A stretch of 63,322 nt of DNA, filler included, from Octopus bimaculoides (lineage: Eukaryota), in assembly GCF_001194135.2 (NCBI RefSeq). It is 5 parts of 4 records of this genome, joined end to end, with 100 filler letters (N's around TTAATTAATTAA, not from the genome) between each part and the next. Parts side by side here need not be neighbours in the genome. Positions count along the whole stretch, not along the records: positions 1 to 23,767 come from NC_068981.1; 4 more parts are not named here. One strand, given 5' to 3'. Under the pieces are notes generated by a model, which made no database searches, was not told the origin of the DNA, and was given only the letters and a program-made list of their open reading frames with translations. Made by a program: the position numbers and the translations under genes. Positions 14,106 through 15,094 of this stretch are shown here, one piece after another. Positions within the stretch are counted from its first letter, which is position 1. Every line of letters starts with the position of its first letter.

Positions 14106-14218
14106 TTATATTTTATGCGTATGTTCGTGTGTGCGTGGATCATCATGCTGTACATAGCAGTTGGATATCCTTTAAATACGACTCAGTCGCTTGAAAAGTT
14201 GACGGACACATTAGAGAA

Positions 14219-14939
14219 ATGTTCGCGAAAAGATGGACGGCTGTTGTAAGGATGTTGAGAGTGCATGGAGCCGTGCCTGAGTAGCCGGTCAAGGTAAAAT
14301 GAAGGAAAAAGGTATGACAAATACGGAGAAAAGCAAAAATACACAAAAGGAAAAATAGAAAGCCGGCAGGTAGAATAAAAACCCCAAAGGTTTATATTTT
14401 ATTATCTAATTTAAAAGAAATTTTTTTAATTAGATGTCAAATTTACGACTTTTATTTCCTCTACGCGATCGGATTCGTTCGTCTTTTCCGGGCCATCGCG
14501 GGACGACGGCGCGGGACGCCACCGCGCGTAAGCGGACTCGTCGGCCAGATCCGAGGACCTCACCGGACCGTTCGATCGGTAGTAGCGACGGCCGGTGTGT
14601 ACAAAGAGCAGGGACGTGATCGACGCGGGCTGATGACCCGCGCCTACCGGAACTCCTCGTTCACAGGGTTGGTTCCAGGCCCCGATCCCTATCACAGAAG
14701 GTGGTTCAGACGTGCGCGCTGATACCTCCAGTTTAGCGCGCGTCCGGCCCCAGACATCTAAAGGCATGAAATTTAAAAAGATCTAATTTAAAAATTCTTA
14801 ATTAGATGTGAAATTCTATTTCACTCGATTTCATTGCACCGTATTAACCATTTCATATCATGTTCGTAATTCCGTCCCTTTGTTGTGACTGTCCTTGTTT
14901 TGTCCCCTCTATGTATGCCCTATAGGGGGAAAAAGAAAT
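14219..14939 (+). mobile_element. 5'-truncated non-LTR retroelement copy (probably L1/Tx1-like) carrying an 18S rRNA cargo
   Basis: 17-bp direct repeat ACGGACACATTAGAGAA at 14202-14218 and 14940-14956; 3' end matches the A' tail; 5' end translates MFAKRWTAVVRMLRVHG, resembling F..RW C-termini of L1/Tx1 ORF2. Confidence 0.7.
14443..14767 (-). pseudogene. 18S: 18S rRNA 3'-region fragment (about 325 bp)
   Basis: Minus strand runs ATGCCTTTAGATGTC...GTCCCTGCTCTTTGTACACACCGGCCGTCGCTACTACCGATCG...AGAGGAAATAAAAGTCGTAA; these are universal SSU motifs, with substitutions at conserved sites. Confidence 0.92.
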
Positions 14940-15094
14940 ACGGACACATTAGAGAACGCACTCCTGAATACACCACATCTGAAAGAAAACTGGGGGTGGC
15001 CTATATCAAGACTGGAACGCCTTTTATCCTAAGAATGCATGATCAGTATTCAAAGCCATTTTCAGACAATAACAATAATAACGGTTTTCAAATG

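What the first reader, a model, noticed from the sequence alone, without database searches (positions are those of the whole stretch)
14202..14956. Retrocopy with a perfect 17-bp TSD that carries an antisense 18S rRNA segment
Seen: ACGGACACATTAGAGAA is repeated exactly at 14202-14218 and 14940-14956. The 721 bp between contain a short ORF end (MFAKRWTAVVRMLRVHG), a ~325-bp 18S 3'-region fragment on the opposite strand, and a 3' end matching the A' SINE tail. Established: long TSDs and 5' truncation are hallmarks of target-primed reverse transcription, and rRNA-derived SINEs and rDNA-targeting LINEs exist. Inference: this is an L1/Tx1-like LINE copy whose 3' UTR contains antisense rRNA. A simple RNA template switch would give sense rRNA. 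So it is either a one-off DNA-level capture or a LINE subfamily that carries an rRNA-complementary module, which could pair with 18S helix 44 or help targeting.
Basis: partly seen in the sequence, partly recalled or inferred. Interest (0 to 1): 0.8.

Follow-up and report, generated by a model that had tools for sequence, protein, structure and literature searches.

The report
Retrocopy carrying a decayed 18S passenger
A 721-bp retrotransposon copy with a perfect 17-bp target-site duplication carries a decayed, backwards piece of the host's 18S rRNA that has its own flanking duplication, so it looks like a captured passenger and an ordinary curiosity, not a new kind of element.

Summary
ACGGACACATTAGAGAA occurs exactly twice, at 14202-14218 and 14940-14956. 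The 721 bp between hold a 21-codon ORF end, a 325-bp 18S rRNA piece on the minus strand (14443-14767), and a 3' tail. The last 56 nt of that tail match the tail of a SINE-like repeat elsewhere in the window, and both end in AAAAGAAAT.

New here: the 18S piece has its own imperfect direct repeat of about 35-40 bp, R1 (14404-14443) and R2 (14781-14815). Each is an AT-rich near-palindrome. The 18S piece is a decayed copy of a host-lineage 18S: 94.4% identical, a 30-nt deletion, and a universally conserved position mutated.

Best reading: a target-primed retrocopy of the 3' end of a tail-specific LINE or a non-autonomous derivative. Its 3' UTR picked up a passenger rRNA fragment by an event that duplicated the break site and was indifferent to orientation.

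The L1/Tx1 label is not supported: there is no poly(A), the tail is specific and shared with a SINE-like repeat, and the nick site is not L1-like. Antisense RNA pieces in LINE chimeras are already known from mammals.

Whether other copies share the junction could not be tested, because no accessible collection holds this genome. Low interest unless a genome-wide search finds a family.

The parts
14202..14218 (.). Left copy of the 17-bp target-site duplication, ACGGACACATTAGAGAA
   Evidence: Exact; one of only two matches in the piece; chance expectation 0.02
14219..14284 (+). 5' end of the insert: 21 codons (MFAKRWTAVVRMLRVHGAVPE) and a TAG stop. Possibly the end of a LINE ORF; unverified.
   Evidence: No Pfam hit. 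Too short for the protein search.
14285..14403 (+). A-rich non-coding stretch (GC 0.34), presumed 3' UTR upstream of the capture site
   Evidence: Sequence read directly; composition; no other copy in the window
14404..14443 (+). R1: 40-nt AT-rich near-palindrome, ATCTAATTTAAAAGAAATTTTTTTAATTAGATGTCAAATT. Left copy of the inner direct repeat. Its last 1-2 T overlap the first bases of the 18S piece.
   Evidence: R1 and R2 align with 32 matches, 2 mismatches and 2 indels; 1 of 2000 dinucleotide shuffles reaches the score. Predicted hairpin -7.4 kcal/mol, z -2.1.
14443..14767 (-). 325-bp decayed fragment of 18S rRNA, about positions 1466-1795 of the 1831-position Rfam model (V8, helix 44, V9). 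It lacks the last 37 nt of 18S.
   Evidence: Rfam 50.2 and 147.9 bits. 306 of 324 aligned bases identical to L001, with 18 substitutions, a 30-nt deletion and smaller indels. L002 agrees with L001 at most of the comparable mismatch sites.
14768..14780 (+). 13-nt filler, GAAATTTAAAAAG, between the 18S piece and R2. Origin unknown.
   Evidence: It does not match the 13 nt upstream of R1 (read directly).
14781..14815 (+). R2: 35-nt right copy of the inner direct repeat, ATCTAATTTAAAAATTCTTAATTAGATGTGAAATT
   Evidence: Predicted hairpin -5.4 kcal/mol, z -1.05.
14816..14939 (+). 3' tail of the element. The last 56 nt (14884-14939) are shared with a SINE-like repeat. Predicted terminal hairpin at 14895-14937. 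Ends in AAAAAGAAAT directly against the right duplicate.
   Evidence: BLAST 78% over 59 columns, E 2.7e-5; alignment; fold z -1.3, not significant
14940..14956 (.). Right copy of the 17-bp target-site duplication
1956..2013 (-). Comparator: 3' tail of the middle copy in a head-to-tail trio of SINE-like repeats. It has the same kind of tail as the element and ends in AAAAGAAAT.

Best explanation
The 721 bp are one retrotransposed copy, inserted in + orientation by target-primed reverse transcription. This produced the 17-bp duplication. The template was the 3' end of a LINE that recognises its own specific 3' tail, or a non-autonomous derivative of it. That same tail is used by a SINE-like repeat family in the window.

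The antisense 18S segment is a passenger. A fragment of the host lineage's own 18S sequence was captured into the AT-rich near-palindromic site R in the 3' UTR. The capture event duplicated about 35-40 bp of that site (R1 and R2), left 13 nt of filler, and did not depend on orientation. Candidate events are a templated insertion during break repair or replication, or a nested retro-insertion. The fragment has since decayed neutrally.

Most likely the capture happened in a source copy before this retrotransposition, but the timing is not resolved.

Shown: the outer duplication, the shared tail, the identity, limits and decay of the 18S piece, and the inner repeat. Inferred: the LINE type, the capture mechanism and its timing.
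For: Outer duplication: exact 17-mer, only two copies, chance 0.02.

3' end: the tail matches the tail of a SINE-like repeat and both end in AAAAGAAAT at the repeat boundary. Shared SINE/LINE tails define 'stringent' LINEs (PMC3747384).

18S identity: Rfam 147.9 bits, E 4.8e-42. 94.4% identity to a genuine 18S (L001), with a near-identical V9 stretch.

Decay: 18 substitutions, of which 10 are C>T or G>A and several lie at CpG; a 30-nt deletion in V8; CCGCCCGTCGC changed to CCGGCCGTCGC. A second related 18S (L002) keeps the 30 nt and agrees with L001 at most of the comparable mismatch sites, so the changes arose in the window copy.

Inner repeat: R1 and R2 lie directly on either side of the 18S piece; 1 of 2000 shuffles reaches the alignment score. 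Both can fold as hairpins.

No gaps: the nearest N run starts at 15992.
Against: Only one copy could be examined, so the canonical UTR without 18S and with a single R has not been seen. R could have been a tandem pair before the capture.

The R1/R2 match is short and AT-rich. About 10% of random pairs of AT-rich 80-mers from this window score as high, mostly because of microsatellites.

A duplication of 35-40 bp is long for a target-primed insertion. The 18S piece has no tail of its own. The 13-nt filler is unexplained.

Timing is weak. If the capture were as old as this insertion, a perfect 17-bp duplication would still be expected 14-24% of the time.

The LINE clade is unknown, and the ORF end is unverified.
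Confidence: 0.6

Rival explanations
1. Single-event chimera. The 18S piece was added during this very retrotransposition, by twin priming or by two polymerase template jumps: from LINE to rRNA or single-stranded rDNA and back. The return jump landed upstream and copied R a second time.
For: Antisense 5S rRNA, tRNA and U5 segments in LINE-1 chimeras are known and attributed to twin priming. 28S rRNA/LINE-1 chimeras also exist (PMC13174262). Double template jumps have been proposed for a tripartite chimeric pseudogene (PMC2104539, title and abstract only). There is a 2-nt overlap (TT) at the R1/18S junction. A perfect outer duplication is still compatible with one shared age, P 0.14-0.24.
Against: In the known chimeras the foreign RNA sits at the 5' end of the insertion. 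Here it is internal, with 224 bp of + oriented sequence upstream. R1 and R2 differ by 2 substitutions and 2 indels, and the 18S piece carries 18 substitutions plus deletions, while the outer 17-mer is intact. The trend suggests the capture is older.
Confidence: 0.2
2. Later nested insertion. The LINE copy inserted first, and an 18S retro-fragment or repair filler landed in its UTR afterwards, at this locus only.
For: The inner direct repeat flanks the 18S piece like a target-site duplication. The orientation of a nested insert is free.
Against: The supposedly younger inner repeat is more diverged than the older outer one: 2 substitutions and 2 indels in about 39 positions, against 0 in 17. The 18S piece has no poly(A) or LINE tail at its 3' end.
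Confidence: 0.15
3. Functional module. A LINE or non-autonomous subfamily keeps a stretch complementary to 18S, including helix 44, because it pairs with rRNA or rDNA and aids translation, localisation or targeting.
For: If the capture predates this insertion, as the divergence trend weakly suggests, the composite has been mobilised at least once. About 94% complementarity over 325 nt would still allow pairing.
Against: The pattern looks neutral: mostly transitions, hits at CpG, a 30-nt deletion, and a change in a universally conserved position. The insertion site is not rDNA. No second copy is available. There is a capture scar: R1/R2 and the filler.
Confidence: 0.05
4. Assembly artefact that joins an rDNA read to repeat sequence.
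For: The piece is a draft with seven N gaps, and rDNA and repeats are prone to misassembly.
Against: There is no gap within 1 kb of the element. The 18S piece is a decayed copy, not clean rDNA. It is enclosed by matching R1/R2 and by a perfect outer duplication with a proper tail.
Confidence: 0.03

Closest known systems
SINE/LINE pairs with a common 3' tail ('stringent' 3'-end recognition; Okada/Ohshima model, PMC3747384)
   Same: The element's last ~56 nt match the tail of a SINE-like repeat in the same window. Both end in the same AAAAGAAAT, there is no poly(A), and a hairpin is predicted next to the 3' end.
   Different: The partner LINE has not been identified. No RT or EN sequence is present in this copy. 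The hairpin is not statistically supported.
LINE-1 chimeric insertions with cellular RNAs (U6, 5S, tRNA halves, 28S rRNA; PMC13174262)
   Same: A LINE 3' part and an rRNA fragment lie within one pair of target-site duplications of 7-17 bp. Antisense orientation of the foreign RNA is documented for 5S, tRNA and U5.
   Different: In those chimeras the foreign RNA is at the 5' end and the LINE is L1 with poly(A). Here the 18S is internal, bracketed by a 35-40 bp duplication, and the tail is not poly(A). 18S was not in the passages of that paper read here.
rRNA-derived SINEs and rRNA retropseudogenes (SINE28, from the 28S 3' end; PMC4994717)
   Same: A fragment a few hundred bp long from the 3' region of an rRNA, found dispersed, flanked by duplications and diverged about 5-10% from the rRNA.
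   Different: SINE28 has the rRNA as a sense-strand head with its own pol III transcription and an A-rich tail. Here the rRNA is antisense, internal and promoter-less relative to the element.
rDNA-specific non-LTR elements (R1, R2, R4, and R7/R8 in 18S; the 18S examples are recalled from memory)
   Same: Association of a non-LTR element with rRNA sequence.
   Different: Those elements sit inside rRNA genes at fixed sites, flanked by rRNA in the sense orientation. This copy sits in unique, AT-rich, repeat-rich DNA and has the rRNA inside it.

Membership tests
Non-LTR retrotransposon copy made by target-primed reverse transcription | Target-site duplication directly flanking the insert | tested here: met
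   17 of 17 identical, only two copies in the piece, chance 0.02
Non-LTR retrotransposon copy made by target-primed reverse transcription | Family-specific 3' end abutting the downstream duplicate | tested here: met
   The tail ends in AAAAGAAAT at 14939. The same ending is found on a SINE-like repeat tail.
Non-LTR retrotransposon copy made by target-primed reverse transcription | Homology to a reverse transcriptase / endonuclease ORF | not testable with these tools
   Only 21 codons remain. No Pfam hit. Below the minimum length of the protein search.
L1 / Tx1 clade | Poly(A) or A-rich homopolymer 3' end, with relaxed template recognition | tested here: not met
   Ends in GGGGGAAAAAGAAAT, and its specific 56-nt tail is shared with a SINE-like repeat
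L1 / Tx1 clade | L1-type endonuclease nick site (TTTT/AA on the primed strand) | tested here: not met
   The inferred nick is CCGT/CAAC, read from the flank at 14199-14205. This is a single site, so the evidence is weak.
Stringent-type LINE, partner of a SINE | 3' tail shared between the LINE and the SINE | tested here: met
   78% over 59 columns, E 2.7e-5 within the window; alignment
Stringent-type LINE, partner of a SINE | Conserved stem-loop next to the 3' end | tested here: inconclusive
   A hairpin is predicted at 14895-14937 with z -1.3. The corresponding SINE tail folds no better than shuffles, z +0.2.
rDNA-specific LINE (R elements) | Inserted in an rRNA gene at a fixed site, flanked by rRNA sequence | tested here: not met
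   The flanks are unique and SINE-like DNA. The only rRNA match in the piece lies inside the element.
rRNA-derived SINE (SINE28-like) | rRNA-derived head at the 5' end in sense orientation | tested here: not met
   The 18S piece is internal and on the opposite strand to the tail
Template-switch or twin-priming LINE chimera | Foreign RNA segment at the 5' end of the insertion, joined directly to a truncated LINE | tested here: not met
   224 bp of + oriented sequence precede the 18S piece inside the duplication. Compare PMC13174262.
Nested or templated insertion with duplication of the break site | Direct repeat immediately on both sides of the inserted segment | tested here: met
   R1 at 14404-14443 and R2 at 14781-14815; 1 of 2000 shuffles reaches the score. 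The AT-rich control is weaker, at 10%.
Propagating subfamily with an rRNA module | Several genomic copies that share the same UTR-18S junctions | not testable with these tools
   No collection holds this genome: 0 hits in the metagenome and prokaryote genome contigs. Even an ORF from the window's SINE-like repeat, a family with five copies in this window alone, finds nothing in the protein database.

The most novel reading that the evidence does not exclude
The composite (LINE 3' UTR with an antisense 18S stretch covering helix 44) is not a single accident. It would be the founder or a member of a mobilisable subfamily whose RNA carries ~325 nt complementary to 18S rRNA, retained because pairing with rRNA or rDNA helps its translation, nucleolar localisation or targeting.
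Probability: 0.08. Interest if true: 0.55.

Novelty: new member of a known kind. Interest (0 to 1): 0.2.

Why it matters
As it stands, this is a well-preserved single example of how retroelement copies pick up pieces of abundant cellular RNA or rDNA. It has a readable scar: a duplicated AT-rich near-palindrome plus filler. It is useful for repeat annotation, because such copies produce spurious 'SSU-rRNA' hits and spurious ORFs. It also gives a likely SINE/LINE tail pairing for this genome. It would matter more only if a genome-wide search showed that the junction is shared by many copies. That would document a non-L1, tail-specific LINE lineage propagating an antisense rRNA segment, and it would give a testable case of retroelement-ribosome RNA pairing.

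Tried and rejected
(1) Looked for other copies through proteins. The 113-aa ORF that runs through the 18S piece found only genuine 18S-derived ORFs, the best at 77% identity. It is not on record itself.

(2) Calibrated that negative result. An ORF from the SINE-like repeat (five copies in this window alone) and a longer ORF at 7700-8098 both found nothing. The protein database therefore does not cover this genome's non-coding DNA, and the negative result says nothing about copy number.

(3) Ran DNA pattern scans. A codon-degenerate pattern for the ORF end and a pattern for the shared tail found 0 hits in the metagenome contigs. The tail pattern also found 0 hits in the prokaryote genome contigs.

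(4) The 21-aa ORF end was too short for the homology search and had no Pfam hit. I did not pad the query.

(5) Searched the supplements of the octopus LINE paper and the whole paper library for strings from the tail, the ORF end and the SINE. Nothing relevant came up.

(6) tRNA origin of the SINE-like repeats: ARAGORN and Rfam find no tRNA, so I call them only SINE-like.

(7) Rejected minus-strand orientation for the element. The 14219 end has no tail, while the 14939 end has the shared tail.

(8) Rejected the idea of two separate LINE copies flanking an 18S pseudogene. The left part would lack its tail, and the exact overlap at R would be a coincidence.

(9) The weak Rfam matches to mir-3910, SCARNA7 and MH_s10 lie far below their thresholds and were dismissed.

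Full report
**Observation.** The sequence at 13900-15300 was read directly. ACGGACACATTAGAGAA is present at 14202-14218 and 14940-14956. Even with two mismatches allowed these are the only matches in the piece. Shuffles expect 0.02 matches, and none of 100 shuffles gave two. The enclosed 721 bp (14219-14939) start with a 21-codon open frame, MFAKRWTAVVRMLRVHGAVPE, followed by TAG.

Rfam finds eukaryotic SSU rRNA on the minus strand. It scores 50.2 bits at the gathering threshold for 14444-14591 and 147.9 bits, E 4.8e-42, in the permissive scan.

**The 18S piece.** No eukaryotic genome collection was available. I therefore searched the 113-aa ORF that happens to run through the rRNA sense strand (14426-14767, minus) against the protein database. 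I then fetched the contigs behind two hits. L001 is a Logan contig and L002 an ENA contig. Rfam shows that both carry the true 3' part of an 18S gene, and in L002 the 5.8S follows.

The window fragment aligns to L001 626-990. This sets its limits at 14443-14767 (325 bp). It stops 37 nt before the 18S 3' end, at ...AAGTCGTAA. Of 324 aligned positions, 306 are identical (94.4%). There are 18 substitutions, ten of them C>T or G>A and several at CpG. There is also a 30-nt deletion in V8 and a few small indels.

The lineage-specific V9 stretch GGTGAGGTCCTCGGATCTGGCCGACGAGTCCGCTTACGCGCGG is identical to L001, so the donor was the host lineage's own 18S or a very close relative. L002 is a second, slightly more distant relative. 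It keeps the 30 nt and agrees with L001 at most of the comparable mismatch sites. These include the universally conserved CCGCCCGTCGC, which reads CCGGCCGTCGC in the window. The fragment is thus a decayed, non-functional copy. I could not name the species of L001, of L002 or of the window.

**The 3' end and orientation.** A BLAST of the 721 bp against the whole piece found one outside match. Window 14884-14939 matches 2013..1956 on the minus strand at 78% over 59 columns, E 2.7e-5. That region is the 3' tail of the middle unit in a head-to-tail trio of SINE-like repeats at about 1750-2410, minus strand. Further copies lie at 15124-15298 and 16558-16672. The middle unit has a different tail from its neighbours, and it is this tail that resembles the element. 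Both end in AAAAGAAAT at the repeat boundary.

A specific tail shared by a short repeat and a longer element, without poly(A), is the signature of LINEs that recognise their own 3' end (PMC3747384). This fixes the element's orientation as + and places its true 3' end directly against the right-hand duplicate. Together with the perfect 17-bp duplication, this is good evidence for target-primed reverse transcription.

So does the inferred nick site on the primed strand, CCGT/CAAC. The 21-residue ORF end cannot be classified. A hairpin is predicted just before the 3' end (14895-14937) but is not statistically distinct from shuffles. ARAGORN and Rfam do not recognise a tRNA in the short repeats, so I call them only SINE-like.

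The 18S piece is bracketed by its own direct repeat:
- R1, 14404-14443: ATCTAATTTAAAAGAAATTTTTTTAATTAGATGTCAAATT
- R2, 14781-14815: ATCTAATTTAAAAATTCTTAATTAGATGTGAAATT

They align with 32 matches, 2 mismatches and 2 indels. One of 2000 dinucleotide shuffles of the two 80-nt flanks reaches this score. A cruder control, random pairs of AT-rich 80-mers from the window, reaches it 10% of the time, largely because of microsatellites. Each copy is a near-palindrome (ATCTAATT...AATTAGAT) that can fold as a hairpin.

R1 abuts the 18S piece with a 1-2 nt overlap (TT). Thirteen nucleotides of unexplained filler, GAAATTTAAAAAG, separate the other end of the 18S piece from R2. The simplest reading is that one continuous 3' UTR (...A-rich part, R, tail) was broken at R. 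A piece of 18S sequence was then copied or inserted there, and the break site was duplicated. Such events do not depend on orientation. Examples are a nested retro-insertion or a templated insertion during break repair or replication at a hairpin-forming AT-rich palindrome. The antisense orientation therefore needs no special explanation.

**Timing.** The 18S piece has about 4-5.5% derived substitutions plus deletions. R1 and R2 have diverged. The outer 17-mer is intact. This trend suggests that the capture happened in a source copy and that the composite was retrotransposed later.

The statistics are weak. If everything were the same age, a perfect 17-bp duplication would still be expected in 14-24% of cases. 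Three timings remain open: capture before this insertion (favoured), during it, or after it.

A capture during this insertion would resemble known LINE-1 chimeras. A 2026 catalogue reports 28S rRNA/LINE-1 chimeras. It also reports that 5S rRNA, tRNA-half and U5 segments are typically antisense to the LINE, and it attributes this to twin priming (PMC13174262). In those cases, however, the foreign RNA is at the 5' end of the insertion. Here 224 bp of + oriented sequence lie upstream of it, so simple twin priming does not fit.

**The module idea.** Nothing here supports a maintained rRNA-complementary module. The substitution pattern looks neutral, a 30-nt deletion removed part of the fragment, a universally conserved position is mutated, and the copy is not in rDNA.

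The decisive test is to count genomic copies with and without the junction. I could not run it:
- Pattern scans of the metagenome and prokaryote genome collections found nothing.
- The protein database does not cover this genome's non-coding DNA. It returns nothing even for an ORF from the SINE-like repeat, which has five copies in this window alone, or for another long ORF.
- The absence of near-identical hits is therefore uninformative.

**Verdict.** The L1/Tx1 assignment and the module speculation are not supported. The element is best filed as a copy of a tail-specific LINE, or a non-autonomous derivative, that carries a captured and decayed 18S fragment with a visible capture scar. Comparable LINE-rRNA chimeras, including antisense ones, are known from mammals, so this is a new member of a known kind. 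Interest is low unless a genome-wide search reveals a family that shares the junction.

Noticed in passing
window 1750-2410 (minus strand): Three SINE-like repeats lie head to tail with no spacer. The middle unit carries a different 3' tail (the one shared with the element) from its two neighbours. This suggests repeated insertion next to an existing tail, or one repeat family using two LINE partners.
   Followed up: partly
window 14426-14767 (minus strand); proteins P0014, P0017: The 113-aa ORF here is only a translation of rRNA. Yet it matches database 'hypothetical proteins', including two annotated in a fish genome (Triplophysa tibetana). These are probably rRNA-derived mis-annotations.
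   Followed up: no
window 17557-17581: Four perfect copies of ACCCTA (the complement of TAGGGT), a telomere-like hexamer array lying inside the piece.
   Followed up: no
window 5807-6192, 11933-12320, 20416-20797, 22700-23035: A second short interspersed repeat family is present: shared blocks CCACATGGTTCCGGGTTCAGTCCC... and ...AAGGCGGTGCTCCAGCATGGCCGCAGTC..., often followed by AT or GT microsatellites (families D16, D18, D19).
   Followed up: no
window 6633-6936, 9010-9299, 15992-16176, 17742-18057, 18792-18801, 20812-21085, 23050-23307: Seven runs of N. At least five directly abut di- or tetranucleotide microsatellites, so the assembly breaks at simple repeats. None lies within 1 kb of the element.
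   Followed up: yes
window 13940-14110 (+) and 15050-15298 (-): Older, more decayed copies of the same SINE-like family lie on both sides of the insertion. The element landed in the roughly 900 bp of unique DNA between them.
   Followed up: partly
window 7640-8143 (minus strand): A 167-aa ORF whose middle looks, by eye only, like the C-terminal part of a LINE reverse transcriptase. It has no Pfam hit and no database homologue, so this is unconfirmed.
   Followed up: partly
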